IMG/VR virus record: IMGVR_UViG_3300050132_000038
Location: 62,001-126,000 of that record
DNA: 64,000 bases
Reading direction: 5' to 3' (one strand)
Program-made: the position numbers and the translations under genes
Shown here: positions 2,348 through 51,617 of the stretch, one piece after another
How positions within the stretch are numbered: position 1 is the first letter of the stretch
How the letters are laid out: every line of letters starts with the position of its first letter
Notes under the pieces: model-generated
Told to the model about the DNA's origin: nothing
What the model saw: the letters and a program-made list of their open reading frames with translations, nothing else
Databases searched by the model: none

Positions 2348-2422
2348 TGGCAGGGGAGGAAGGGATCGAACCTTCGCGTGCTAGTGTCAAAGACTAGTGC
2401 CGTACCACTTGGCTACTCCCCT
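2348..2422 (-). tRNA. tRNA-Gln (anticodon TTG)
   Basis: Cloverleaf: AGGGGAG/CTCCCCT acceptor, GCC/GGC D stem, CTAGT-CT TTG AC-ACTAG anticodon arm, GAAGG TTCGATC CCTTC T arm, encoded CCA. Confidence 0.95.
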
Positions 2423-12538: not shown

Positions 12539-13735
12539 CTACGCACCCTTGACGCACATTACCTGCTTCAACACATGTACCACGTCTATCAGATCCTTTG
12601 AATTCTCGATCACGGTATCAATGTTCTTGTAGGCTGCTGGAATCTCATCGAGGACAGAATCATCCTTCAAGCATTCCACGCCCTCAGTTTGCCTCACCAG
12701 ATCAGCAACGGTGAAACGCCTACGAGCTTCCGTCCTGGACATCGAACGTCCCGCGCCATGCGAGCATGAGCAGTAACTCAGCTTGTTTCCCTTACCCTTA
12801 ACGATGTAAGATTTCTGGCCCATCGATCCAGGAATGATCCCTAGCTCACCTTCCTTCGCGGAGATAGCGCCCTTACGAGTGATCCACAGATTCTTCCCGA
12901 AGTGGTTCTCCTTCGTGACGTAATTGTGGTGGGTGTTAATGGCTTCCTGGGTTACAGAGAACTCGATTGGTATGTGCCGCTGTAATGCAGATATAACACT
13001 CAACATCATTACCTTGCGATTCAACAAGGCGTAGTCTTGTGCCCACCCTACAGCTTCCATGTATGCGTTGAAGTCTTCGCTGTCTTCGGGAAGGTACGCC
13101 AGATCCTCATCCGGGAGATTGATGAACCATCCTTGCATTGCCTTCTTCGCCTTCTCGATGAAGTGAGAAGCAATCATGTTGCCTATACCACGAGAACCAG
13201 AGTGGAGCATAATCCACACGTCCTGATTCTCGTCTATGCAGATTTCGATGAAGTGATTACCAGAACCAAGGGTACCTACTTGTTGTGCTGCCTTACGTGT
13301 AAGCCTATCGATTTTTCCGATCCCAGGGCTGCGTTCTTGGATAGAGGACAGTTCGGAACTATGAGTATCAGACCACTCCCTAGGAATTCGATCCTCCTTG
13401 TGTTCATAGCGACCAGTTGGTACATCCCGTTCGATCTGGTTCCGAATCTCTTTCAGGTTATCTGGTAGGTCTGAAGCTTTGAGCGACAGGCGGACAGCGT
13501 TCATGCCACACCCAAGATCTACGCCGACTGCCGCAGGGATGACTGCCTTCTCAGTTGCGATCACCGTACCGATTGTTGACCCCTTACCTGCGTGTACATC
13601 GGGCATGAGTGCCACACCGTTGTGGTGGATGAAGGGCAGACGCGCAATGTTCTTCGCCTGGTTTAACGCCGCGTCTTCAATATCGTCAGTCCACAACCTA
13701 ATCAACCTAGACCCTTCGTCAGCAATAACTTTCAT
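12539..13735 (-). CDS. rtcB: RtcB-family RNA 3'-phosphate/5'-OH ligase
   Basis: MPDVHAGKG, AVGVDLGCG, GTLGSGNHFIE, HSGSRG, THHNYV, HRKGA-like TRKGA, IPGSMG, SHGAGR, LDEIPAAYK motifs. Confidence 0.95.
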   Translation of the reverse strand: MKVIADEGSRLIRLWTDDIEDAALNQAKNIARLPFIHHNGVALMPDVHAGKGSTIGTVIATEKAVIPAAVGVDLGCGMNAVRLSLKASDLPDNLKEIRNQIERDVPTGRYEHKEDRIPREWSDTHSSELSSIQERSPGIGKIDRLTRKAAQQVGTLGSGNHFIEICIDENQDVWIMLHSGSRGIGNMIASHFIEKAKKAMQGWFINLPDEDLAYLPEDSEDFNAYMEAVGWAQDYALLNRKVMMLSVISALQRHIPIEFSVTQEAINTHHNYVTKENHFGKNLWITRKGAISAKEGELGIIPGSMGQKSYIVKGKGNKLSYCSCSHGAGRSMSRTEARRRFTVADLVRQTEGVECLKDDSVLDEIPAAYKNIDTVIENSKDLIDVVHVLKQVMCVKGA

Positions 13736-13736
13736 C

Positions 13737-13874
13737 TCAGTCCTCGTTACGATTCTTATGTTTGCCGTACCCTTGCTTCTGCAAGTGCTTGCGATTGGCA
13801 AACCTAGAGCATCGGTTAATCTTCAACCCATATCTTGCTACTGGGTTACGAACCGAAGTCCGTACCTTAGTCAT
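13737..13874 (-). CDS. 45-aa basic peptide (not in ORF track)
   Basis: MTKVRTSVRNPVARYGLKINRCSRFANRKHLQKQGYGKHKNRNED fills the gap exactly between flanking genes. Confidence 0.65.
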   Translation of the reverse strand: MTKVRTSVRNPVARYGLKINRCSRFANRKHLQKQGYGKHKNRNED

Positions 13875-13877
13875 ATG

Positions 13878-14213
13878 CTACTCCTTGTCGAATTGGTGCA
13901 GCATTTCAAGCATCGTGGCATACCGTGATTCAATCGCCCAATGGTCAACCAGCACCCTCTGGTTTGCGGAACCCCAGGGAAACCGCATGAACACCCAATC
14001 GAAGTCCCGCTCATCTGCTTGAGCTGCAGGCATAACCCGAACCTCGTGGCCATCTAGCTTAGTTAAGTCCTCTAGCATTATTCGGAGCATATTCGCGTGG
14101 CTATGGCTATGGGTAATCACGCACACCTCGTAGCCCTCGCTGGATAATCGAATTGCCTCCTCTAACATTCGAGTTGTGCGCCCTGTCCCACGTTGCGTAT
14201 CAACATCGTACAT
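13878..14213 (-). CDS. Small P-loop-like phage protein
   Basis: QRGTGRTTRML and VLVDHW motifs. Confidence 0.7.
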   Translation of the reverse strand: MYDVDTQRGTGRTTRMLEEAIRLSSEGYEVCVITHSHSHANMLRIMLEDLTKLDGHEVRVMPAAQADERDFDWVFMRFPWGSANQRVLVDHWAIESRYATMLEMLHQFDKE

Positions 14214-14225
14214 AAAAGATTCTCC

Positions 14226-15740
14226 TTAGACCACTGTCAGGGTTTCATTATCCTTGGCGTGTTTGAAGCTTCGATCCTTCTCGATTGCTGCCCGTGTGTC
14301 AGCCAGGTCTAACAGGATTTTCGACTTCGGCTTCTTTTGCCACGCCTGTAATTGTTTCAATACGCCTTGCTGCTCCTTCATCTTGGTATTTAGCGCCTGC
14401 TCTTCCAAACGTGTTAACTGGTCGAGCCGCAAAGCCAAGATTTGCTTCACTTGTTCGACAGTGAGTTTCAGCTTTTTCACAATGTACGCCGTAGGATCTG
14501 GTGTCTTCCGCACCGCGTAGATAACCGTATCCAACTTGTCCACTGCGAAGATCAACAGCTTGGAGTAGGCAATCGCTGCCTCCTGCTTATGCACACGATA
14601 CGCCAAACTCTTGAGTTCCAACTCGATACGCATCTTCAGCCATTGCACAATCAGCTGTGGAACAGACAAGGCCAAGAACTTGGTCTCGAACGTTGTAATG
14701 CCATCGACTGTTTGTGCTTCTCGCTTCGTTACGTTGATCTTGAACGAGCATGACTGACGAGTTGCCAGTTGCACCTTCTCCACATACTTATCGAACTGGG
14801 TAAAGTTGTATGCAGCTTTGCATTCGATGGTGAGGGTGGCTGAACCTTTAGAGTTATAGCACCGTTGGGTTTCAGGCATAGCCCTAACCTTATCAATGAA
14901 GCGTTGCAGGTTGGTACCTGGAGGCCAGTCAGAGATCACCATCTTCTTATGATCCCGGTCTACCTCAATGTCAGATTCAAACTTCACGTTCGTTTCCGAC
15001 TCCCTGAACATCTTGATCCACGCTTCCTTGTTCTCCTTGGTATTGAGAAGATGCCCGCCCCACTTGTGGGCGAACTTCAACGCTTTGGCGAAGTCTAAAG
15101 ATTGAAGCTTCTCACCTTTCAACAAACGTTCGAGTACACCGATCACTGATTCGGGAGTGAACGTTGGTAGTGAGGTAGTGATACCCACACCGATACCCTC
15201 ACCTCCGTTGATAATGACATTAGGCAACTGTGCAGGTAATGTTACTGGCTCAATATCCTTGTCGTCGTAGTTAGGCACAAATGTTGTAACATCTTTGTGG
15301 ATGTAGTCCGACAGGAAGAACGATTGACCGTACGCAGAGAGGCGCATATTCGTATAACGCATCGCAGCTGCGTCGTCGATCATGTTACCCCAGTTCCCCT
15401 TACCGTGAATGGCAGGCGTGGGGTGATTGACGATTGTAGTGATTGCACCTGCGATGGAACTATCTCCGTGAGGGTGCCACCTACCCATAACCAACCCCAC
15501 TACACGCGCTGTCTTCTCAAACGTGGAGAAGGACTCCTTAGACGCTCCCCACAGGATACGCCTCTGCACCGGCTTGAGACCGTCGTACAAGTCAGGCACT
15601 GACCGATCAAGATTAACTGCTATGGCGTACGTTGTCATGTTACGCTTACCGAAGTCGCGCAGTGCCTCGTCCTTCACATGCTTATCAGCAGCAGGTACCA
15701 GACCACCAGTAGGTGCCTTAGTTTTCTTCTTCGTTACCAT
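14226..15740 (-). CDS. gyrA: Type IIA topoisomerase subunit A (GyrA/ParC-like, no CTD)
   Basis: DGLKPVQRRILW, KTARVVG, HPHGDSSI, AAAMRYT (catalytic Tyr); only 504 aa. Confidence 0.92.
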   Translation of the reverse strand: MVTKKKTKAPTGGLVPAADKHVKDEALRDFGKRNMTTYAIAVNLDRSVPDLYDGLKPVQRRILWGASKESFSTFEKTARVVGLVMGRWHPHGDSSIAGAITTIVNHPTPAIHGKGNWGNMIDDAAAMRYTNMRLSAYGQSFFLSDYIHKDVTTFVPNYDDKDIEPVTLPAQLPNVIINGGEGIGVGITTSLPTFTPESVIGVLERLLKGEKLQSLDFAKALKFAHKWGGHLLNTKENKEAWIKMFRESETNVKFESDIEVDRDHKKMVISDWPPGTNLQRFIDKVRAMPETQRCYNSKGSATLTIECKAAYNFTQFDKYVEKVQLATRQSCSFKINVTKREAQTVDGITTFETKFLALSVPQLIVQWLKMRIELELKSLAYRVHKQEAAIAYSKLLIFAVDKLDTVIYAVRKTPDPTAYIVKKLKLTVEQVKQILALRLDQLTRLEEQALNTKMKEQQGVLKQLQAWQKKPKSKILLDLADTRAAIEKDRSFKHAKDNETLTVV

Positions 15741-15748
15741 TTTAGTCC

Positions 15749-18292
15749 TTACGCTGCTTTACGTTTAATGAGGGCCTTCTTAACGGCTACCACTTTCTTT
15801 ACGGGAGCTTCCTCGGCGTCATTGCCCGTAGAACTGGAAGGTAAGCCTAGCATGTCTCTTCGGTACTGAACATTATCGTCCATCAACTTTACAAAATCCA
15901 CCTTATCATCGGATTCGATAGCTTTGATACGTATCACCTTACGAGTCTCTGGATTCATTGCGAGGATCCGCATGAGATTTGCGTCTAGCTCACCCCACCC
16001 TTTAATATGATTTACAAGGACCGTGGAGGGGGCTTTGAACTTCAGCAGTTTCTTCTGCGTCTCGGATACAGTGTCTCCTGTAATCAACTGCCCTTTGTGA
16101 ACTGCATAGAACTCAGGGGCATTTGACACGTACACCATACCCTTCTTGAATAGTTCGGGTAGGTAACGGTAGAATAGGGTTAGCAGCAGACTATTGATGT
16201 GACAGTTACTGGAGACGATACCAGAAGGTAGAATGAAGTTATGATAACGCGGGACCGTCAAACAGTAAACAGGTACAGGCTCCTTCAACTTCTGAATCCG
16301 CATCTTCGACACAGGGGCAAACCCAAGGCCGGTCAGCTTGTCACAGCTCGAGGGATTGCGTGACTTGTTGGACGAGGGAAGGAATACCCGATCGCCAATC
16401 TTCAAGTCCTCTGATGCAACATACACCAGATTATCGAAGTTTGTCGGCTGAGTACGACGACCATACATTGCATTGGTGACCAAACACATCCACTTATGCG
16501 ACATATCCACTTTGTACTTGGTACCTCCGATCTCCAAGGCAACGAGCGTGTCCACATTCTTAACTAGCTCTGCTGTTGCAGGTGCCCATGTCTCTTTAGC
16601 GCCAGTCCACACCGGAACTTCGAAGATGGGAGCTGCTACAGAGTACGGGCCACCGCGGTCTACGGCAGTAAGTTCGTAAATCTCCCGCTCATACTCTGAA
16701 CCATTTATACGAACTCGAATTTTGGTGTCACGCACAAACGGGCCGTCTGGGTCCGGGTCGGCCAAGCAGATGATCTTACCGATAGTCAGCTTCGAGTAGG
16801 GATCACTTGCTTTCACGTCGTAGCCAATTGCTGCCAGAATGTTAATCACTTCCTCTGACTCTAATGCCTTGCCCTTATTATCCTTTAAGCTGTTGAGAAT
16901 TTTCCCGCGAAGTGGAAGCACCCCTTGATATGGAAAACGAGCCTCCTTGGTCGTGCCCCCGGCACTGTCTCCCTCTACTAAGAACAGCTCCCGGTCCTGC
17001 GGTTTAGTCCGACTGTCGAATGCGGCATACTTTGCGGGTAGCCCATTGCGCTTTACCGCGTTGAGCTTGCCTGCTGCCTTCTTCGACATTGTGAACTTGG
17101 TCTTCAACTCATTCATCTGCGTAGCGCGGTCTGCAATGCGCTGAGCCAATGCCTTGTTCTCTTTGAAGAACTTCGTTGTCGCAAGCGTGAGGGCCGTTTC
17201 AAAGTCCTTACCCACTCGATCGTCAGTCAGCTTTGCCTTATCCTGGGAACTGAACTGTGCCTTGTGCAACTTTGCATTCACGAGGCCCACCAAACCTTCC
17301 TTCAAGTCGGCCTCACGGAATACCGGAACCTGCTTGCCGTCCACCTTCTTCGTTTTGATGAATGGCTTCAAGCCTGCATACAGAGCACCCGTTACTGAAT
17401 CAACGTGCTTACCGCCCTGCCCGTTGTTCAAACCATTAGTGAAGCCTCGCACATCACAGCCATCATAGTTTGAGAATGCGACAACCACATCAGCAAGGCT
17501 TGAGCTGTTCTCAAACATCTGACGCTCGCCCTCAGTCTTTAGCTTCAGCATACGCTGGGCTACGTACTCCGTCGGACCCTTCTTCGACAGAAATTGTTTT
17601 GCACCCTTTGCGCTACTTATAGTGATGGAGAACCCAGGGTTGAGGTATGACATAATCTCAGCCCACTCTACCGCCATTGATGCAGGAAATGACTTGGCTG
17701 AGAAGATGGTGGAGTCAGGCTTGAAATGGATCACCGTACCAGATGTAGGGCGCTTACCATTCCACAGCTTAGGTGCTGTCTTAGCCGCAGCAACAGGGGA
17801 CGTAAGTTTACCTTTCTTGAAACCAATCGTGTGCCATTTGCCTTTGAAGAAGGTACACGCGTCGAAGAAGTCAGCCGTGGCATTCGTGCCCTTCGCGCCT
17901 ACGCCGTGCGTGCCCACTGAAATCTTGTAAGCGTCATCACGATATTTGCCTGACGTATGCAATTCCCCGAACACTGCTTGCATAGTGGACATGGTGAAAA
18001 TCTTTTCACCGCTTCCCGTAGTTGCTTCCCACTTCTTAATGCCCTGCGGAATGCCGTGTCCATTGTCCGTCACCCAGTACGAACCGTCTGAGTCAACATG
18101 GAGATGCACCGAGTCGTTACGCCCAGCCAAGTGCTCGTCCAGTCCATTGTCGAGGAGCTCTCGGGCGCAAAGCCATACCCCGGAGGCATCCACACTGCCA
18201 AGATACATAGAGGGGTTTCGGCGGATTGATTCCGGGAATCGTAATGTCTCGATGTGACTGCTATCGTACTCTGCTACCTTCTTGGTTGCCAT
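15749..18292 (-). CDS. gyrB: Type IIA topoisomerase subunit B (GyrB/ParE-like) with intein
   Basis: ELLDNGLDE, DNGHGIP, GTHGVG, LFLVEGDSAGG, PLRGKILN, ADPDPDG...HINSLLLTLF. Confidence 0.95.
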   Translation of the reverse strand: MATKKVAEYDSSHIETLRFPESIRRNPSMYLGSVDASGVWLCARELLDNGLDEHLAGRNDSVHLHVDSDGSYWVTDNGHGIPQGIKKWEATTGSGEKIFTMSTMQAVFGELHTSGKYRDDAYKISVGTHGVGAKGTNATADFFDACTFFKGKWHTIGFKKGKLTSPVAAAKTAPKLWNGKRPTSGTVIHFKPDSTIFSAKSFPASMAVEWAEIMSYLNPGFSITISSAKGAKQFLSKKGPTEYVAQRMLKLKTEGERQMFENSSSLADVVVAFSNYDGCDVRGFTNGLNNGQGGKHVDSVTGALYAGLKPFIKTKKVDGKQVPVFREADLKEGLVGLVNAKLHKAQFSSQDKAKLTDDRVGKDFETALTLATTKFFKENKALAQRIADRATQMNELKTKFTMSKKAAGKLNAVKRNGLPAKYAAFDSRTKPQDRELFLVEGDSAGGTTKEARFPYQGVLPLRGKILNSLKDNKGKALESEEVINILAAIGYDVKASDPYSKLTIGKIICLADPDPDGPFVRDTKIRVRINGSEYEREIYELTAVDRGGPYSVAAPIFEVPVWTGAKETWAPATAELVKNVDTLVALEIGGTKYKVDMSHKWMCLVTNAMYGRRTQPTNFDNLVYVASEDLKIGDRVFLPSSNKSRNPSSCDKLTGLGFAPVSKMRIQKLKEPVPVYCLTVPRYHNFILPSGIVSSNCHINSLLLTLFYRYLPELFKKGMVYVSNAPEFYAVHKGQLITGDTVSETQKKLLKFKAPSTVLVNHIKGWGELDANLMRILAMNPETRKVIRIKAIESDDKVDFVKLMDDNVQYRRDMLGLPSSSTGNDAEEAPVKKVVAVKKALIKRKAA
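16205..16741 (-). mobile_element. 179-aa class 3 mini-intein in GyrB
   Basis: Insert PFVRDTKI...SHKW...VYCLTV...HNFILPSGIVSSN followed by +1 Cys; removing it restores DPDG-CHINSLLL. Confidence 0.88.
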
Positions 18293-27450: not shown

Positions 27451-27663
27451 TTAATCTTCAAGTCGAAGACGTGCGTCCTTAACCCGATCGAGATTGCGTT
27501 CACTTAGATTCTCTATGATGAAGCACCCATGACCGTCCTCATGCGAAAGGGTAAGGCCATGCACACGACATAGTTCGTCGTACGCCGCTATGAAGTCCTC
27601 AACCTTCTGCGGAGACTCCACTCGCGCACCCTGTATTTTATCCCACCGCTTAACTTTACTCAT
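27451..27663 (-). CDS. Hypothetical protein
   Basis: Packed ORF; LSHEDGHGCFIIE. Confidence 0.65.
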   Translation of the reverse strand: MSKVKRWDKIQGARVESPQKVEDFIAAYDELCRVHGLTLSHEDGHGCFIIENLSERNLDRVKDARLRLED

Positions 27664-28370
27664 GATCTTTCCTTTGCCAGAGTAGAGACTACAGGTAGTC
27701 CATCTTTACGAGGGCGGCCTCGGGACAGCTCGTCAATTCGACGGTTAGCTTTTGGTGCCACGGTAGCACGGTACTCCTCGCCACCCAGTACCCAGCCTGC
27801 GTGAGCATACTTGATAATTGTCTTGGCGTGCTGCTCAGATACAGACTCCGCTACAAGCTTCGAGTATGCCGCCTGGCGCGCGAAGGGAGTATTGCCCAAG
27901 GCCCAGTACTCAGCGTGAGGCGTCAAATTTGTATCTAGGGAAACGCCTAGGTTGTGTAGCTGACTAGATGCTTTGCTAGGTAACTGATGCGTAGCAGCCT
28001 CTGCGTCAATTAGAACAGAGCAACGTAGGAACCACTCAGCGGAGTCTACAACGGTAGCGCGATAACGGCCTTGCCACAGCGTGCCACTCCGCTTGTAGGC
28101 CCTATTGTATAGAGCAACATATGTGCGGCCTACACCTTGAATTGTTTTCGATAAACTTTGATCGTTACCTGGGGTAACAAGTAGTTGAACACCGCTAGGG
28201 AGCATAGAGTACGCATGGATCTTCAAGTCGTGGCGTTTGGCATTCGCTACGAGCAGATTATAAAACTTTGCTTGATCGGCCAGGGCAGGGAACGGATTGA
28301 CTCCAGATATGGTGTCAAGAATCACGTACTGTACTTCGTTAGGAATGAATAGACGGGGAAGGCGTGCCAT
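27660..28370 (-). CDS. RAYT/Y1 transposase-like protein, catalytically degenerate
   Basis: MARLPRL, IHAY.ML, LLVTP, YNRAYKRSGTLWQGRY, YWALGNTP, GWVLG, RGRPRK are retained; HUH reads SGVQLL and the catalytic Tyr is absent. Confidence 0.85.
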   Translation of the reverse strand: MARLPRLFIPNEVQYVILDTISGVNPFPALADQAKFYNLLVANAKRHDLKIHAYSMLPSGVQLLVTPGNDQSLSKTIQGVGRTYVALYNRAYKRSGTLWQGRYRATVVDSAEWFLRCSVLIDAEAATHQLPSKASSQLHNLGVSLDTNLTPHAEYWALGNTPFARQAAYSKLVAESVSEQHAKTIIKYAHAGWVLGGEEYRATVAPKANRRIDELSRGRPRKDGLPVVSTLAKERS

Positions 28371-28421
28371 TTGTTTTCTCTTTTTATGTTGTTAGTTAGC
28401 GCCTCTCGGGGCGCCAGCATG

Positions 28422-28805
28422 TTACGCTTTGAGTTGACCTTCGACTGCACGCTTGATACGATCTTCAGTGCGCTGCTTCAACCAGTTAAGTGCTTGAACT
28501 ACGTGATGCAGTGCCATATCATTCTCAGCGCAGGGATAGGGACCAATCTGAAATGAGTTAAGCCGATCTGCTACGATTGCCAACAGGACTTCGTGAGTAA
28601 CGCCGTTGATACCATTCACAGGGATCGGCCCGTTCTGGAAATTGATATTCACAATAGGGCTTGCGTATTCTATACCTTCTGGGTCTGGAGAGTAGTACGC
28701 AACATACTCGTGGCTAGCACCGCCGGCACCTGGCTCGTCTGTTACGGCAATAAATAGTTCATTCTTTTCGTTGCCTGCTACTTTGTGGCTCGTGACTTGT
28801 CGCAT
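28422..28805 (-). CDS. tad1: Tad1-family anti-defence sponge protein
   Basis: GAGGASHEY...INFQNGP...GVTHEVLLAIVADRLNSFQIGPYPCAENDMALHHVVQALNWLKQRTEDRIKRAVEG follows the recalled Tad1 consensus over its full length. Confidence 0.8.
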   Translation of the reverse strand: MRQVTSHKVAGNEKNELFIAVTDEPGAGGASHEYVAYYSPDPEGIEYASPIVNINFQNGPIPVNGINGVTHEVLLAIVADRLNSFQIGPYPCAENDMALHHVVQALNWLKQRTEDRIKRAVEGQLKA

Positions 28806-28825
28806 TTTTTTTAATTCTCCAGGGG

Positions 28826-29407
28826 TTAAGCTGCAATTACAAAACGATAGTAGAAGTGTTTCTGTAGATTATGTCCCCAGGCTTCTGACTCGATGCACCG
28901 TAGCCACAGCCTAAAGGATGAATCGTCCTGCCAGTCAACCGGATTCGTATCAAACATAACACCTACTTTATGTCCAGACTTTGTTGCTTTGCCCAATAGG
29001 TCTAGCCAGAAGCGCTTCCCATCATCACTCTGAGACGCATCTGAGACTATATAGTTATACCTATGCAGAAGAATCTCGAACACTACAAACTTCGCTAATC
29101 CGGTAACGGCTGAGTTACCTGCGCGGCGCCACACCGCTACTTGGGTAACGCTATTTGAGGGTAGCTGAAGTAACTTCTCTGCTTTGAGATGTACTAGATA
29201 CACGATCTCCGCTTCATCGGAAATCGCAACAATGTACGATTCTTTACTAGAGATCTTAAACTCTACCAGTGGTAACTCATTATAAATCGAGATTTGCTCA
29301 TGTGTGTACTTCGTGTACAGCTCTTGTAACTTACGTCTGTTGTCTTCAAAATCTTTTAGACCGAACTGAACTGGGTCTACTAGATATGGGGCCGAAGTTA
29401 CTTCCAT
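28826..29407 (-). CDS. GNAT-fold-like hypothetical protein (paralog of 36837..37415)
   Basis: VWRR...GLAKFVVF..LLHRY.YIVSD.SQS..GKRFW.DLL. Confidence 0.75.
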   Translation of the reverse strand: MEVTSAPYLVDPVQFGLKDFEDNRRKLQELYTKYTHEQISIYNELPLVEFKISSKESYIVAISDEAEIVYLVHLKAEKLLQLPSNSVTQVAVWRRAGNSAVTGLAKFVVFEILLHRYNYIVSDASQSDDGKRFWLDLLGKATKSGHKVGVMFDTNPVDWQDDSSFRLWLRCIESEAWGHNLQKHFYYRFVIAA

Positions 29408-29841: not shown

Positions 29842-30083
29842 CGCCTACTCCGTTGGTGGGGTATATGCTATATTTACAGGAATTCGCATATCGCATTTTT
29901 AATGTGTAAGAGGAATTCACACATTCCACAATTTTACACAAATCCAAAACACAGGATTTATCTTTAGACTGACAGATAGCCATAGAATTATAGAACAAGG
30001 CTCTGTTACGTATCTTAGCCTCGGGACTAGCCGGATTGATAGCTGTATTGATCTCTCCTAAACTAGTTAAAGAGGAACTCAAA

Positions 30084-31136
30084 ATGGCTGATCTTGTTAA
30101 TCCCACGGTACTGAGCACTGGCGGTCTCATGGGTAGTGGTTATGGCAACAACGGTGGCTTGATGGGCGGGGATGGTATTGGCTCCTTGCTTATCGGTGCT
30201 CTTCTGTTTGGCGGTGGCCTGGGTGGTGGCTTTGGTGGCCGTAATGGTTTGGCTGCTACTGCTGGGGATACTGTGACTACTGCTCATCTTCAATCGGCAT
30301 TGAATCAACAAACCCAGAGCCAGAATACCAACAACATTCTGCAAAGCTTGGCTACCATCCAGCAGCTGATCCCTGAGAACGAGGGTCGCGTTCAAGCGGC
30401 TATCGCCGGTGCTCAGATCGCTTTGGGCAATCAAGCTTCACAAGGTCAACTGGCGGCAGCTAACCAAGCTTCGCAAGGGCAGTTGCAAGTTGCTGCTTCC
30501 ACGGCCCTGCTGACCAACAACGTTGCAGACGCACGCCACAACATCAACGATAACATCCATGCAGGTGTGCTTTCCCAACTCGCAGGGCAAGCCGCGATTA
30601 CGGCAGGTGTAGTTGAAGCCCGCAAGGATATTAACGATAACATTCACCTGGGTCGCTCGGAAGCAGCAAACGGTTTCTCTAGTGCTTCGTTGCAAGCTGC
30701 AAACTATAGTGCCGCAACCCAGTTGGGTATTGCTAACCTGGGTCTTCAGACTGCTCAACAAACGTCTGTTCTTACGGATCAAATCCGTGATGACGGCGAT
30801 AAGACTCGTTCCCTCATTGTTGCTCAGTACGAAGCTAACCTGCAACGGTTGCTCACGACTGCTCAGAATGAGATTATCGAACTGCGCGGTGATCGCAACA
30901 TGCGTGAAGCACATCGTGGCACGGAAGTTACTGTTAGCCAGAACGTGTCGCAAGCTTCTGCTCAGGCTCAACAGCAACAACAGCAACAACAGCAGTTTGC
31001 TATCCTTTCGCAAATTGCAGCTAGCTTGTCCGGTCTTACCCAGATCGCTCATGCTACGAACCAGAATGTGATTTCTGGTAACAGTGGTGCTGTGCAGACT
31101 GGTCCCCAGAATGCCAATCCCACGAACGTCGCCTAG
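30084..31136 (+). CDS. Gly-rich/hydrophobic N-terminus plus Gln/Asn/Ala-rich coiled-coil protein
   Basis: AGAGGA RBS; GSLLIGALLFGGGLGGGFGG; DGDKTRSLIVAQYE; poly-Q; C-terminal NQNVISGNSGAVQTGPQNANPTNVA. Confidence 0.85.
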   Translation: MADLVNPTVLSTGGLMGSGYGNNGGLMGGDGIGSLLIGALLFGGGLGGGFGGRNGLAATAGDTVTTAHLQSALNQQTQSQNTNNILQSLATIQQLIPENEGRVQAAIAGAQIALGNQASQGQLAAANQASQGQLQVAASTALLTNNVADARHNINDNIHAGVLSQLAGQAAITAGVVEARKDINDNIHLGRSEAANGFSSASLQAANYSAATQLGIANLGLQTAQQTSVLTDQIRDDGDKTRSLIVAQYEANLQRLLTTAQNEIIELRGDRNMREAHRGTEVTVSQNVSQASAQAQQQQQQQQQFAILSQIAASLSGLTQIAHATNQNVISGNSGAVQTGPQNANPTNVA

Positions 31137-44160: not shown

Positions 44161-45180
44161 CTAACTTACAGTGTTAAGAATCTTTCGTCTAATAGATTTT
44201 ATTTTCTTCCGCATAGCCTCGTCTACATCTAGGCTGGAAACCCAGGTGCGAAAGAAGTCTTCCGTCTTGAACGACACAGCCTGTCCCTCGGTTAAGTCTT
44301 CGGTGAGGACCATCTGCAGGTCCTCCTTCGACTTGAATGGCTTAATCATTACGATGTTTGAAAACTTACCGTAGTCCGATGCCGATACATCCGCCCCATC
44401 CTGGATGACTAGCTTCACTAGATTGAACCCACCCTCTGGAATAGTTGCCAGGTCATCTCGAGTGTTCAGTACGATAGTGTGCAGCTTGTATTTGGGGTCG
44501 TGCTTGACCAGCCGGATTTCGTAATCCTTCGGCCCGTTGAATTCTATGTGATGGAAATACTTTGGAAGGCTTTCTCCAAAGTTTTGTTGATATAGTGTTC
44601 CGCTGTAATACGTGTTACGGACTCTATGAGCGGTATGCAAATGTCCAGCGACGATAACGGACTTGGAGTCTGTAAGATCATCTGATCCCATGACACGCCC
44701 CGCGTCGTTCTTACTTCCGCGAACTTCTTTATGGTAGACATTGAGAGCCTTACTATCGAAGGATTCGTGAGGGTACGGGAGGAACCGAACTGGAGCACCG
44801 TCGATCTCTACCGTCTTTGGTTTAGTGTAGAACTTCACGTTAGACTTAGAGTACAAGAGCTTCAACAGTTCTAGGGAATGCCCGGTGTCCGGTGTTTCTC
44901 CATAGAGGTCATGGTTCCCTAGGATGATATGGAACGTGAAGTCATCGTTTGATGCAAGGAATCTTGAGAGGGCCATCATCCCCTGATACGAACCCCTGGG
45001 TGAATCAAAAATATCCCCGTACAGCAGAGTGGTATTGATCCCATGCTTCCTCCCGTATTGTAAAACCTTTTCCATCTCCTCCGTTACCATTTGATCGGAG
45101 TCCTGCACGTACTTCGATAGTCCACCCGACCCGTCTGCGCTCGACAGGTGCAGGTCCCCGATGCCCAAAAATTCAGCCAC
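44161..45180 (-). CDS. SbcD/Mre11 (T4 gp47-like) recombination nuclease subunit
   Basis: GDLHL, GDIFD, LGNHD, AGHLH, YSGTL..NFGE metallophosphoesterase motifs. Confidence 0.8.
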   Translation of the reverse strand: MAEFLGIGDLHLSSADGSGGLSKYVQDSDQMVTEEMEKVLQYGRKHGINTTLLYGDIFDSPRGSYQGMMALSRFLASNDDFTFHIILGNHDLYGETPDTGHSLELLKLLYSKSNVKFYTKPKTVEIDGAPVRFLPYPHESFDSKALNVYHKEVRGSKNDAGRVMGSDDLTDSKSVIVAGHLHTAHRVRNTYYSGTLYQQNFGESLPKYFHHIEFNGPKDYEIRLVKHDPKYKLHTIVLNTRDDLATIPEGGFNLVKLVIQDGADVSASDYGKFSNIVMIKPFKSKEDLQMVLTEDLTEGQAVSFKTEDFFRTWVSSLDVDEAMRKKIKSIRRKILNTVS

Positions 45181-50660: not shown

Positions 50661-51617
50661 TTACTCCTTGGTTAGAGTTGGTTGGCAGTAAGCAATTTCT
50701 AAGAAGGCTGCCAAGGACGCCGCGGTCGCCCTAAGTTCTTGCTGTCGCTCTTTAGACTGTCCCGCTAGTATTCGAATCCGTTTTATATTAGGTGCTGAAA
50801 ACGGTTTAACTTTAAATGGGGCCTCGACCTGTAAGGCAATTGCGGTCATAGGGACCTGCTCTAAGTCATCCATGCTATAAATTTTGTGAAGGTAGCCGCT
50901 ATTCTTCTTAGCGGCCCTCTCTACTTTTTCTACAGTAACGATGGCAGGTTTAACTTTCTTAATGACCCGGGACAGGTGCCCCTCAGAGGTTACTTGAGAA
51001 TAGCCGAGCAGATTACATTTCTCGATCTTCCATAGCTCATCTGACTTGTAGTTTATGTAGTGGAAAGCGGGATCAGAATTATTTGCCAGTGTGCCCGCGT
51101 AGAAGGTGTTTCTAAATCGTAATTCTCTGTGCAGGTGTCCAGCTACAGTAACAGCATCACTCTTCTTCATTCCTACCTTAAAGTCCAAGCCTAACTTCTT
51201 TTCAACTTCGGGGACAGCAGCGTGGACTACATTCAGAGCATCGAACATTAGTCGCGCATGAGGCCACGGATTAAAGTTTACGTGAGCTCCGTCTATGTCT
51301 ACCACTTCGGCCCTAGAACTGAAGACGGTAACGTTATGAGCTCTGAGCAGATCTAGGCTACAGGAGGATGCTTCCCGATTGTTAAAGAGATCATGATTAC
51401 CAGCGATGATCCAGAAGCGTAGGTCATTGTACTCGGCAAATAGTTTTCGTAGCTTGCGGACAACGGTAAGGTCACCATCCTCTACAAGGTCCCCGTACTG
51501 AAAGATATTTTGTATCCTCCTCTTTCTCGCAATGTCACAGACGTGAGAAATCCTGAACAGGCGCGATTTCATGTTGGTAGGTTCGAGATGCAGATCTGCT
51601 ATCCCTAGTGCTCTCAT
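50661..51617 (-). CDS. Second SbcD/Mre11-like metallophosphoesterase
   Basis: ADLHL, YGDLVE, AGNHD, AGHLH, YAGTL. Confidence 0.75.
   Translation of the reverse strand: MRALGIADLHLEPTNMKSRLFRISHVCDIARKRRIQNIFQYGDLVEDGDLTVVRKLRKLFAEYNDLRFWIIAGNHDLFNNREASSCSLDLLRAHNVTVFSSRAEVVDIDGAHVNFNPWPHARLMFDALNVVHAAVPEVEKKLGLDFKVGMKKSDAVTVAGHLHRELRFRNTFYAGTLANNSDPAFHYINYKSDELWKIEKCNLLGYSQVTSEGHLSRVIKKVKPAIVTVEKVERAAKKNSGYLHKIYSMDDLEQVPMTAIALQVEAPFKVKPFSAPNIKRIRILAGQSKERQQELRATAASLAAFLEIAYCQPTLTKE

What the first reader, a model, noticed from the sequence alone, without database searches (positions are those of the whole stretch)
28422..28805. Tad1-type immune-signal sponge
Seen: full-length match to the recalled Tad1 pattern, including GGAxHEY, FQxG, DRLxxFQxGP, CxEN and the C-terminal RxEDRxxRxVxG. 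Established: Tad1 proteins sequester Thoeris gcADPR, and some also bind CBASS cyclic nucleotides. Its presence suggests that the neighbouring small genes at 26-29.8 kb form an anti-defence cluster (inference).
Basis: partly seen in the sequence, partly recalled or inferred. Interest (0 to 1): 0.6.

Follow-up and report, generated by a model that had tools for sequence, protein, structure and literature searches.

The report
Tad1-family immune-signal sponge gene
A 127-residue gene of an uncultured 219-kb jumbo phage is a genuine relative of Tad1, a phage protein that soaks up the alarm molecules of the bacterial Thoeris defence; this is an ordinary find, except that this copy seems to have lost the second pocket that other Tad1 proteins use for CBASS cyclic trinucleotides.

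Summary
It matches the solved Tad1 proteins over nearly their whole length (phmmer E 2e-18 to 3e-16; family profile 8.6e-29), and Tad1 chains are the only significant fold matches. A homodimer is predicted (ipSAE 0.86, best control 0.04). All four residues that hold gcADPR or cyclic dinucleotides in CbTad1 are kept and are invariant in 120 relatives. The two residues that hold cyclic trinucleotides (CbTad1 R90, T97) are Ala and His here, and most hexamer-interface residues are changed. This is shared by a supported clade of 16 metagenomic relatives. The most likely function is a gcADPR (possibly dinucleotide) sponge without trinucleotide binding. Nothing was measured.

The genome is a complete phiRSL1-like jumbo phage, probably of a Burkholderiales host. 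phiRSL1 itself lacks the gene. Outside the window the phage also carries a NARP2-like NAD+ salvage pair. Verdict: a new member of a known, widespread family; low to moderate interest.

The parts
28422..28805 (-). Tad1-family gene, 127 aa plus TAA stop (protein P0001)
   Evidence: ORF. PDB phmmer hits only Tad1 chains, E 2e-18 to 3e-16. A profile of 34 relatives hits Tad1 at 8.6e-29. phrog_2428 at 9.5e-30.
28817..28820 (-). GGAG ribosome-binding site, 11 nt upstream of the ATG; the 20-nt gap to the upstream gene suggests co-transcription
   Evidence: Read directly from the sequence. No sigma-70-like promoter excess in 24-31 kb: 12 found against 8.2 +/- 2.9 in shuffles.
28608..28805 (-). N-terminal beta-sheet half (residues 1-66) with GGASHEY and FQNG; it holds the variable loops (residues 31-53)
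   Evidence: AF2 model has strands 2-4, 18-21, 33-37 and 50-55. Against the 87%-identical copy in L002, codons 1-53 have dS about 1.3 while codons 54-127 have dS 0.10.
28437..28607 (-). C-terminal two-helix hairpin (residues 67-123), which forms the dimer core and carries the ligand-contact residues
   Evidence: Helices 71-87 and 93-118 with pLDDT about 90. They superpose on Tad1 chains at rmsd 0.5-1.6 A over 51-61 residues, Z 5.2-6.0. They make the dimer contacts.
28458..28553 (-). Span holding the codons of the gcADPR/cyclic-dinucleotide pocket: F85 (28551-28553), N95 (28521-28523), R112 (28470-28472), R116 (28458-28460). These correspond to CbTad1 F82, N92, R109 and R113, and all are retained.
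   Evidence: Ungapped HMMER alignment to 7uav and 8kbb, with residue roles. F and N are invariant in all 120 relatives; R112 and R116 are R in every row that has a residue there, 118 and 117 of 120.
28506..28529 (-). Span holding the codons at the cyclic-trinucleotide / three-fold site: A93 (28527-28529, Arg in CbTad1/CmTad1), D96 (28518-28520, Ala in CmTad1), H100 (28506-28508, Thr in CbTad1/CmTad1). All three are substituted.
   Evidence: alignment. R/K at position 93 in 94/120 relatives and T at position 100 in 87/120. The query's clade of 16 lacks the R/K+T pair.

Best explanation
The gene encodes a stand-alone Tad1-family sponge. The protein is probably made inside the infected cell as part of a long leftward array of small accessory genes. 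It pairs into a homodimer through its C-terminal helical hairpin. Each dimer has two pockets lined by F85, N95, R112 and R116. These pockets sequester the TIR-made Thoeris signal 1''-3' gcADPR (and 1''-2' gcADPR, possibly some cyclic dinucleotides), so the ThsA NADase effector is not switched on. Canonical Tad1 hexamers also trap cA3/cAAG at the three-fold interface. This copy, and its clade of metagenomic relatives, has replaced the Arg/Thr pair and most hexamer-interface residues. It is therefore predicted not to bind cyclic trinucleotides, and it may not form the canonical hexamer. What is shown: homology, residue conservation and substitution, clade distribution, purifying selection and a predicted dimer. 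What is inferred: ligand binding, loss of trinucleotide binding, oligomeric state, timing of expression and the host's possession of Thoeris.
For: Full-length similarity to CmTad1 and CbTad1 (profile 8.6e-29), with no Acb2 chain at E<=10. All 20 Foldseek hits with E<=1e-3 are Tad1 (best E 2e-7, prob 1.00), and the hairpin superposes at 0.5-1.6 A. Homodimer ipSAE is 0.86 against a best control of 0.04; 20 of 30 solved homo-pairs and 1 of 23 single chains reached the mark; the runs agree in at least 99% of contacts and partner pLDDT is at least 87. Pocket residues F/N/R/R are kept and invariant in 120 relatives. Their mutation abolishes gcADPR and 2',3'-cGAMP binding in CbTad1 (paper 10.1101/2023.11.15.567273). 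For the trinucleotide site, R90A or T97A markedly reduces cA3 binding in CbTad1, and here those positions are A93 and H100, with D96 in place of Ala. The hexamer contacts CmTad1 K96/Q98/E99/M102/K106 are H101/V103/Q104/N107/Q111 here, with only W108 kept. The query sits in a clade of 16 with SH-aLRT 95: 13 members lack both R/K and T, and 3 keep only K. The local Pfam hairpin model, whose matched part in canonical relatives (shown for P0020) spans this same segment, scores them at 15-32 bits and misses this clade entirely. Selection is purifying: dN/dS is 0.19 overall and 0.06 for codons 54-127 against L002. The gene is accessory: it is absent from the nearest cultured relative, phiRSL1 (the same query gave E 9.5e-86 on the phage's own genome).
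Against: No binding, oligomer or infection data exist for this protein or its clade. The dimer pass may be model memory of solved Tad1 complexes. The monomer model places the N-terminal sheet poorly (global TM about 0.43, rmsd 17 A). H100 and H101 could in principle still contact phosphates. The host is unknown: ThsB-type TIR domains occur in 30 of 201 sampled genomes of the presumed host order, but no ThsA was found in the two loci inspected. In the study PMC12393519, about a quarter of sponge homologs inhibited none of seven tested systems.
Confidence: 0.72

Rival explanations
1. It is a fully canonical two-pronged Tad1. It forms a hexamer and sequesters cyclic trinucleotides as well as gcADPR, using alternative contacts such as H100/H101 in place of Arg/Thr.
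For: The overall fold and helix register are conserved, and W108 and C92 at the interface are kept. Most Tad1 homologs keep both sites, and only about 6% have trinucleotide-site substitutions. His can hydrogen-bond phosphate (general knowledge).
Against: Single R90A or T97A changes markedly reduce cA3 binding in CbTad1. Here both are changed and an acidic D96 is added. The HH pair is not conserved within the clade, where positions 100-101 read AY, LH, AF, EY, DH or GH. Five of six hexamer-interface residues differ.
Confidence: 0.1
2. It is a Tad1-fold sponge whose specificity has moved away from gcADPR to another nucleotide signal. That signal could be a cyclic dinucleotide only, another TIR product, or a signal not yet described, with the remodelled three-fold site or the variable loops 31-53 defining a new pocket.
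For: Sponge families show wide specificity shifts, and a quarter of tested homologs inhibit none of seven systems (PMC12393519). Dinucleotide spectra differ among Tad1 homologs through loop differences. The N-terminal half of the gene, which holds these loops, has been exchanged by recombination between close relatives.
Against: The four gcADPR-contacting residues are strictly invariant across the 120 relatives, which argues for an unchanged primary ligand. In the same study Tad1 homologs inhibited CBASS and type I Thoeris, as expected.
Confidence: 0.12
3. It is not a free sponge but a virion-associated protein, like phiKZ gp184, in which a Tad1-like domain is fused to a capsid-anchoring N-terminus and injected with the DNA.
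For: The family profile matches phiKZ inner capsid protein gp184 (8y6v chain I) at 3.2e-21 over residues 112-227. gp184 is described as Tad1 that is packaged and injected (10.1101/2025.11.23.690004; PMC11297242). This phage is also a jumbo phage.
Against: The ORF is only 127 aa and starts with the family's conserved MR N-terminus. It has no extra N-terminal domain, the upstream gene ends 20 nt away in another reading unit, and the length matches the stand-alone Tad1 proteins of 123-138 aa.
Confidence: 0.04

Closest known systems
CbTad1 (Clostridium botulinum prophage Tad1; PDB 7UAV, 7UAW, 8SMD, 8KBE-8KBH)
   Same: Same length class and architecture. It aligns over residues 24-123 at E 2.7e-16, and the hairpin is 49-53% identical at rmsd 0.5-1.6 A. 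Pocket residues F82/N92/R109/R113 correspond to F85/N95/R112/R116.
   Different: CbTad1 R90 and T97 (cA3/cAAG binding and hexamer formation) are A93 and H100 here. The loops of the N-terminal sheet differ. No biochemistry exists for this copy.
CmTad1 (PDB 8KBB-8KBD)
   Same: It is the best single PDB hit (E 2e-18, residues 30-124), with the same helix register and with C87, M92 and W103 conserved as C92, M97 and W108.
   Different: Trinucleotide contacts R88/A91/T95 are A93/D96/H100 here. Hexamer contacts K96/Q98/E99/M102/K106 are H101/V103/Q104/N107/Q111.
phiKZ gp184 / Tad1 (PDB 8Y6V chain I), a capsid-packaged Tad1
   Same: A Tad1-like domain encoded by a jumbo phage; the profile match is 3.2e-21.
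   Different: gp184 is 230 aa with an N-terminal capsid-anchored part that is processed by the head protease and injected. The window's protein is a free-standing 127-aa domain.
Acb2 (anti-CBASS 2 sponge)
   Same: It shares the helical hairpin defined by Pfam PF24729 Acb2_Tad1_hairpin, and it is also a hexamer that binds trinucleotides at three-fold sites.
   Different: No Acb2 chain is matched at E<=10 by the sequence or by the family profile. The Tad1-type N-terminal sheet with GGAxHEY is present here.
'ABC transporter ATPase' / hypothetical proteins of Agrobacterium and Rhizobium phages OLIVR5, OLIVR6, IC12, IG49 and LG08
   Same: These are the nearest proteins in GenBank phage genomes: 48.5-49.3% identity over 99% of the length.
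   Different: They are less than 50% identical. Closer relatives (61-87% identical, full length) exist only on metagenomic contigs.

Membership tests
Tad1 (Thoeris anti-defence 1) sponge family | Significant full-length sequence similarity to experimentally characterised Tad1 proteins | tested here: met
   phmmer E 2e-18 (8kbb) and 2.7e-16 (7uav), covering residues 24-124. The profile of 34 relatives gives 8.6e-29. The only other matches at E<=10 are phiKZ gp184, itself described as Tad1, and one chance-level hit in each search.
Tad1 (Thoeris anti-defence 1) sponge family | Architecture of about 120-140 aa: N-terminal antiparallel beta-sheet plus two C-terminal helices | tested here: met
   The AF2 model (pLDDT 79) has four strands followed by helices 71-87 and 93-118. 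All 20 Foldseek hits with E<=1e-3 are Tad1. The hairpin superposes at 0.5-1.6 A, but the sheet orientation in the monomer model is poor, with global TM about 0.43.
Tad1 (Thoeris anti-defence 1) sponge family | gcADPR / cyclic-dinucleotide pocket residues (CbTad1 F82, N92, R109, R113) | tested here: met
   F85, N95, R112 and R116 are present. They are invariant in 120 relatives wherever a residue is aligned. Their roles are from paper 10.1101/2023.11.15.567273.
Tad1 (Thoeris anti-defence 1) sponge family | Cyclic-trinucleotide site residues (CbTad1 R90/T97; CmTad1 R88/T95) | tested here: not met
   A93 and H100 occupy these positions, and D96 replaces CmTad1 A91. This is shared by the query's clade. 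The paper reports that about 6% of Tad1 homologs have substitutions at this site, so it is a secondary feature rather than a bar to membership.
Tad1 (Thoeris anti-defence 1) sponge family | Homo-oligomer: a dimer that forms the pocket, then a trimer of dimers (hexamer) | tested here: inconclusive
   The dimer is supported in silico: ipSAE 0.86 against a best control of 0.04; 20/30 solved pairs and 1/23 single chains reach the mark; at least 99% contact agreement; pLDDT at least 87. This may be model memory of solved Tad1 complexes.
Tad1 (Thoeris anti-defence 1) sponge family | Binds gcADPR and rescues phage from type I Thoeris | not testable with these tools
   This needs ITC or native-gel binding and plaque assays.
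Pfam PF24729 Acb2_Tad1_hairpin | Score above the gathering cut-off (27 bits) | tested here: inconclusive
   The local PF24729.2 gives no hit at E<=10, whereas the precomputed PF24729.3 is on record for this exact protein. The local model scores canonical relatives at 15.5-32.3 bits and misses clade member P0007.
Acb2 (anti-CBASS 2) | Sequence similarity to solved Acb2 proteins | tested here: not met
   No Acb2 chain at E<=10 with the single sequence or the profile.
   The neighbours were scanned in Pfam, PHROGs and NCBIfam, and none matched an anti-defence family. No Tad2 is present in the genome. No dedicated anti-defence library was available, so unknown families cannot be excluded.

The most novel reading that the evidence does not exclude
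The clade of 16 Tad1 relatives to which this gene belongs has remodelled the three-fold interface (no Arg/Thr pair, most hexamer contacts changed, and an exchangeable N-terminal loop module). It may be a distinct Tad1 subtype: either a dimer-only, gcADPR-only sponge that avoids binding cyclic trinucleotides (for example to escape decoy-sensing systems such as Panoptes), or a hexamer whose central pocket takes a different, still unidentified signal.
Probability: 0.2. Interest if true: 0.5.

Novelty: new member of a known kind. Interest (0 to 1): 0.28.

Why it matters
Tad1 sponges are already known to be widespread: 1,587 non-redundant homologs were found in IMG/VR v3, and 1928 hits were found here. 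Finding one more adds little in itself. There are three modest points of value. First, it annotates an otherwise uncharacterised gene in a complete phiRSL1-like jumbo phage. It also shows that the phage pairs signal sequestration with a NARP2-like NAD+ rebuilding pathway, giving two independent layers against NAD+-depleting defences such as type I Thoeris. Second, it points to a natural clade in which the trinucleotide and hexamer site has decayed while the gcADPR pocket is strictly kept. That clade is a ready-made test of how the two activities can be separated. Third, it warns that the older Pfam hairpin model misses this clade.

Tried and rejected
- **Local Pfam-A and NCBIfam:** both scans of the protein returned no family. 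A search of the phage's own genome with PF24729.2 also found nothing. This reflects the weakness of that model version and is not evidence against membership.
- **Hexamer modelling:** I submitted the protein as two chain entries of three copies each.
- **Sequencing runs:** There is therefore no expression or sample information, and read laying was not used.
- **Promoter and terminator scan of 24-31 kb:** the counts were not above those of shuffled sequence.
- **Near-identical DNA in GenBank phages:** none found.
- **Prophage copies of the clade:** among GTDB species representatives there was only one hit, a 48%-identical relative in Janthinobacterium. The best IMG/VR relative is 59% identical.
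- **Whether the presumed host order carries Thoeris:**
  - The ThsB_TIR domain is present in 30 of 201 sampled genomes.
  - In the two loci inspected, the ThsB-like genes sit in defence islands (Mokosh, type I R-M), and no ThsA was identified.
  - The question stays open.
- **Neighbour proteins:**
  - 193 aa: only 5 close homologs, a weak GNAT-fold resemblance (Foldseek E about 1e-3, TM about 0.4) and an Atlas lead. Its function is not assigned.
  - 140 aa: no usable match.
- **Supplementary tables of PMC12393519:** these may already list this IMG/VR protein, but they are not held.
- **Large representative-protein search:** not used, because the word search and the PDB search had already settled the family.

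Full report
**What is there.** Window 28422-28805 on the minus strand is an ATG-initiated ORF of 127 codons plus a TAA stop. A GGAG lies at 28817-28820, 11 nt upstream of the start. The preceding gene stops at 28826-28828, so the gene sits in a tightly packed leftward array.
- GGASHEY, residues 28-34
- FQNG, residues 56-59
- DRLNSFQIGP, residues 80-89
- CAEN, residues 92-95
- RTEDRIKRAVEG, residues 112-123

**Is it a Tad1?** Yes, by several independent lines.
- *Sequence against solved structures.* phmmer against all PDB sequences returns the Tad1 chains: CmTad1 8kbb at E 2e-18 and CbTad1 7uav/8kbg/8kbh/8kbe at about 3e-16. It also returns the C-terminal part of phiKZ gp184, and nothing else of significance.
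- *Family profile.* A profile of 34 relatives raises the Tad1 hits to 8.6e-29 and matches gp184 residues 112-227 at 3.2e-21. No Acb2 chain appears even at E<=10.
- *Other libraries.* PHROGs gives phrog_2428 at 9.5e-30 across residues 6-126. The word search finds 1928 homologs, and all 120 listed carry the precomputed Pfam family PF24729 Acb2_Tad1_hairpin.
- *Predicted structure.* An AlphaFold2 model (mean pLDDT 79) has four strands followed by two long helices. All 20 Foldseek hits in the PDB with E<=1e-3 are Tad1 structures (best E 2e-7, prob 1.00). The helical hairpin superposes on them at 0.5-1.6 A over 51-61 residues, Z 5.2-6.0. The global TM is only about 0.43 because the monomer model misplaces the N-terminal sheet, so the structural evidence is weaker than the sequence evidence.
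- *Predicted dimer.* A two-copy model scores ipSAE 0.86 against a best control of 0.04. The mark was reached by 20 of 30 solved homo-pairs and by 1 of 23 single chains. The runs agree in at least 99% of contacts, and partner pLDDT is at least 87. Because Tad1 complexes are solved, this pass may be model memory.

**A discrepancy.** The local Pfam-A copy holds PF24729.2, and it reports nothing for this protein even at E<=10. I scanned relatives to understand why. Canonical ones score only 15.5-32.3 bits (cut-off 27), and another member of the query's clade, P0007, is also missed. In P0020, the best-scoring of these, the matched stretch (residues 78-117) spans the hairpin segment that carries the trinucleotide and hexamer residues. 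That is exactly where this clade has diverged.

**Ligand-site reading.** I mapped residues through the ungapped HMMER alignments. The PDB chains carry tag offsets of +1 for 7uav and +10 for 8kbb. Residue roles come from Li et al. (10.1101/2023.11.15.567273).

| Site | Reference residues | This protein | Status |
|---|---|---|---|
| gcADPR / cyclic-dinucleotide pocket | CbTad1 F82, N92, R109, R113 | F85, N95, R112, R116 | all kept |
| Cyclic-trinucleotide site | CmTad1 C87, R88, A91, M92, T95 (CbTad1 R90, T97) | C92, A93, D96, M97, H100 | Arg, Ala and Thr replaced |
| Hexamer contacts | CmTad1 K96, Q98, E99, M102, W103, K106 | H101, V103, Q104, N107, W108, Q111 | only Trp kept |

- The four pocket residues are invariant in the 120 nearest relatives wherever a residue is aligned. 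Mutating them abolishes gcADPR and 2',3'-cGAMP binding in CbTad1.
- R90A or T97A alone markedly reduces cA3 binding in CbTad1, and disrupting the hexamer abolishes it.
- Among the 120 relatives, position 93 is R or K in 94, and position 100 is T in 87.
- On a quick maximum-likelihood tree the query lies in a clade of 16 with SH-aLRT 95. Thirteen members lack both residues and three keep only a Lys.
- Li et al. state that about 6% of Tad1 homologs have substitutions at the trinucleotide site, so the condition is known in principle.

My reading is that this is a gcADPR (and possibly dinucleotide) sponge that no longer takes cyclic trinucleotides and may not assemble the canonical hexamer. This is inference from residues. 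The hexamer could not be modelled.

**Selection and mosaicism.** A JGI contig (L002) carries an 87%-identical copy in a region that is 92% identical at the DNA level. Against it, overall dN/dS is 0.19, and codons 54-127 give 0.006/0.104. Codons 1-53, however, have dS of about 1.3. The 15 amino-acid differences in residues 31-53 therefore reflect exchange of the 5' half of the gene by recombination, not positive selection (dN/dS 0.36 there).

**Genome and host.**
- The window is bases 62001-126000 of a 218,861-bp IMG/VR record with direct terminal repeats, estimated 100% complete.
- It encodes T4-type topoisomerase II subunits, RtcB and SbcD-like proteins.
- The large topoisomerase subunit is 63% identical to that of Ralstonia jumbo phage phiRSL1 and 56% identical to those of Burkholderia phages BcepSauron and BcepSaruman.
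- phiRSL1 has no Tad1 homolog, so the gene is accessory in this lineage.
- The 236-aa gene just downstream has 3603 homologs. The named ones among the 120 listed are from Burkholderiales (40-47% identity) and are annotated as transposase or RayT. This points to a Burkholderiales host.
- ThsB-type TIR domains occur in 30 of 201 sampled genomes of that order. I did not find ThsA in the two loci I opened, so the presence of the target system in the host remains unshown.

**The neighbours.** None of the small genes between about 21.7 and 29.8 kb matches a known anti-defence family.
- *193-aa upstream protein:* five close homologs, a PHROG of unknown function and a weak GNAT-fold resemblance.
- *140-aa protein:* nothing usable.
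- *Region as a whole:* comparison with L002 shows gains and losses of whole genes, as expected of an accessory region. That does not make it an anti-defence cluster.

**Elsewhere in the genome (outside the window).** There is a Nampt gene (466 aa; phrog_448 at 1.4e-142, with NAMPT_N and NAPRTase domains) next to a 366-aa NMNAT/Nudix gene. The latter matches phrog_395 at 2.9e-40 and NUDIX at 4e-15, and carries an HxGH motif. This is the NARP2 composition, which counters NAD+-depleting defences including type I Thoeris (10.1101/2024.02.11.579819). No Tad2 is present.

**Comparison with what is known, and verdict.**
- The protein is a member of the Tad1 family by sequence, architecture and primary pocket.
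- It fails one secondary family feature, the trinucleotide site, and its hexamer state is open.
- It differs from phiKZ gp184/Tad1, which is fused to a capsid-anchoring N-terminus and injected.
- Tad1 homologs have already been catalogued from IMG/VR, so this very protein may already be listed. The supplementary tables were not available to check.

It is a new member of a known kind, of low to moderate interest.

Noticed in passing
window 27453-27669 (70-aa ORF 27451-27663, minus strand); L002 1402-1406: Relative to the 92%-identical contig L002, the window has an extra 217 bp carrying a 70-aa ORF. In L002 the flanking genes (the window's 236-aa and 64-aa ORFs) are fused in frame into one 300-aa ORF. 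Bacterial homologs end where the 236-aa form ends, so the window has the normal gene boundaries and L002 looks like a deletion-fusion.
   Followed up: partly
window 28422-28805, breakpoint near codon 54 (about 28645): The Tad1 gene is itself mosaic. Against the L002 copy, dS is about 1.3 for codons 1-53 but 0.10 for codons 54-127. This indicates recombinational exchange of the N-terminal sheet and loop module between related phages.
   Followed up: yes
window 27660-28370 (-): This 236-aa Y1 (IS200-like)/RayT-like protein has 3603 homologs; the named ones among the 120 listed are from Burkholderiales. The HUH histidines are replaced (PSGVQLL), as in the Burkholderia and Paraburkholderia copies, whereas the Oxalobacteraceae copies keep PNHVHLL. 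It has no relative in GenBank phages. It is probably a host-derived, catalytically altered gene of unknown role, and it is a clue to the host.
   Followed up: partly
window 28826-29407 (-): This 193-aa protein lies directly upstream of the Tad1 gene and matches phrog_1349 (unknown function, 5e-15). The top Foldseek hits are all GNAT acetyltransferases, but weakly (E about 1e-3, TM about 0.4), and the Atlas lead points to Acetyltransf_1. A Q/R-x-x-G-x-A-like motif (xxxGLA) is only partly conserved.
   Followed up: partly
L003 1351-2751 (-), and G000:C1:48952-50052 (-); both outside the window: A NARP2-like NAD+ reconstitution pair: Nampt (466 aa) next to a bifunctional NMNAT/Nudix protein (366 aa). 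Together with Tad1 this gives the phage two separate counters to NAD+-depleting defence.
   Followed up: partly
window 12539-18292 (-), 44161-45180 (-), 50661-51617 (-), 2348-2422 (-): Replication and repair module of a phiRSL1-like jumbo phage. It comprises topoisomerase II large and medium subunits, RtcB RNA ligase, two SbcD-like paralogs and a tRNA-Gln(TTG).
   Followed up: partly
window 30036-31136 (+): A divergently transcribed 366-aa protein, rich in Gly and Gln and with a run of nine Gln. It has no family match apart from a sub-threshold DUF6603 hit.
   Followed up: no
L049 (G195:C3:60000-72000) and L050 (G007:C3:223000-235000): In two Burkholderiales-order genomes, pairs of ThsB-like TIR genes flank a protein of 682-684 aa and sit beside Mokosh or type I R-M genes. 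No recognisable ThsA is present. This may be a non-canonical TIR system.
   Followed up: partly
window 28399-28414: A short GC-rich inverted repeat (5-bp stem GCGCC/GGCGC, 6-nt loop) lies just after the Tad1 stop codon and before the next gene. It has no U-tract and the terminator scan did not call it.
   Followed up: no
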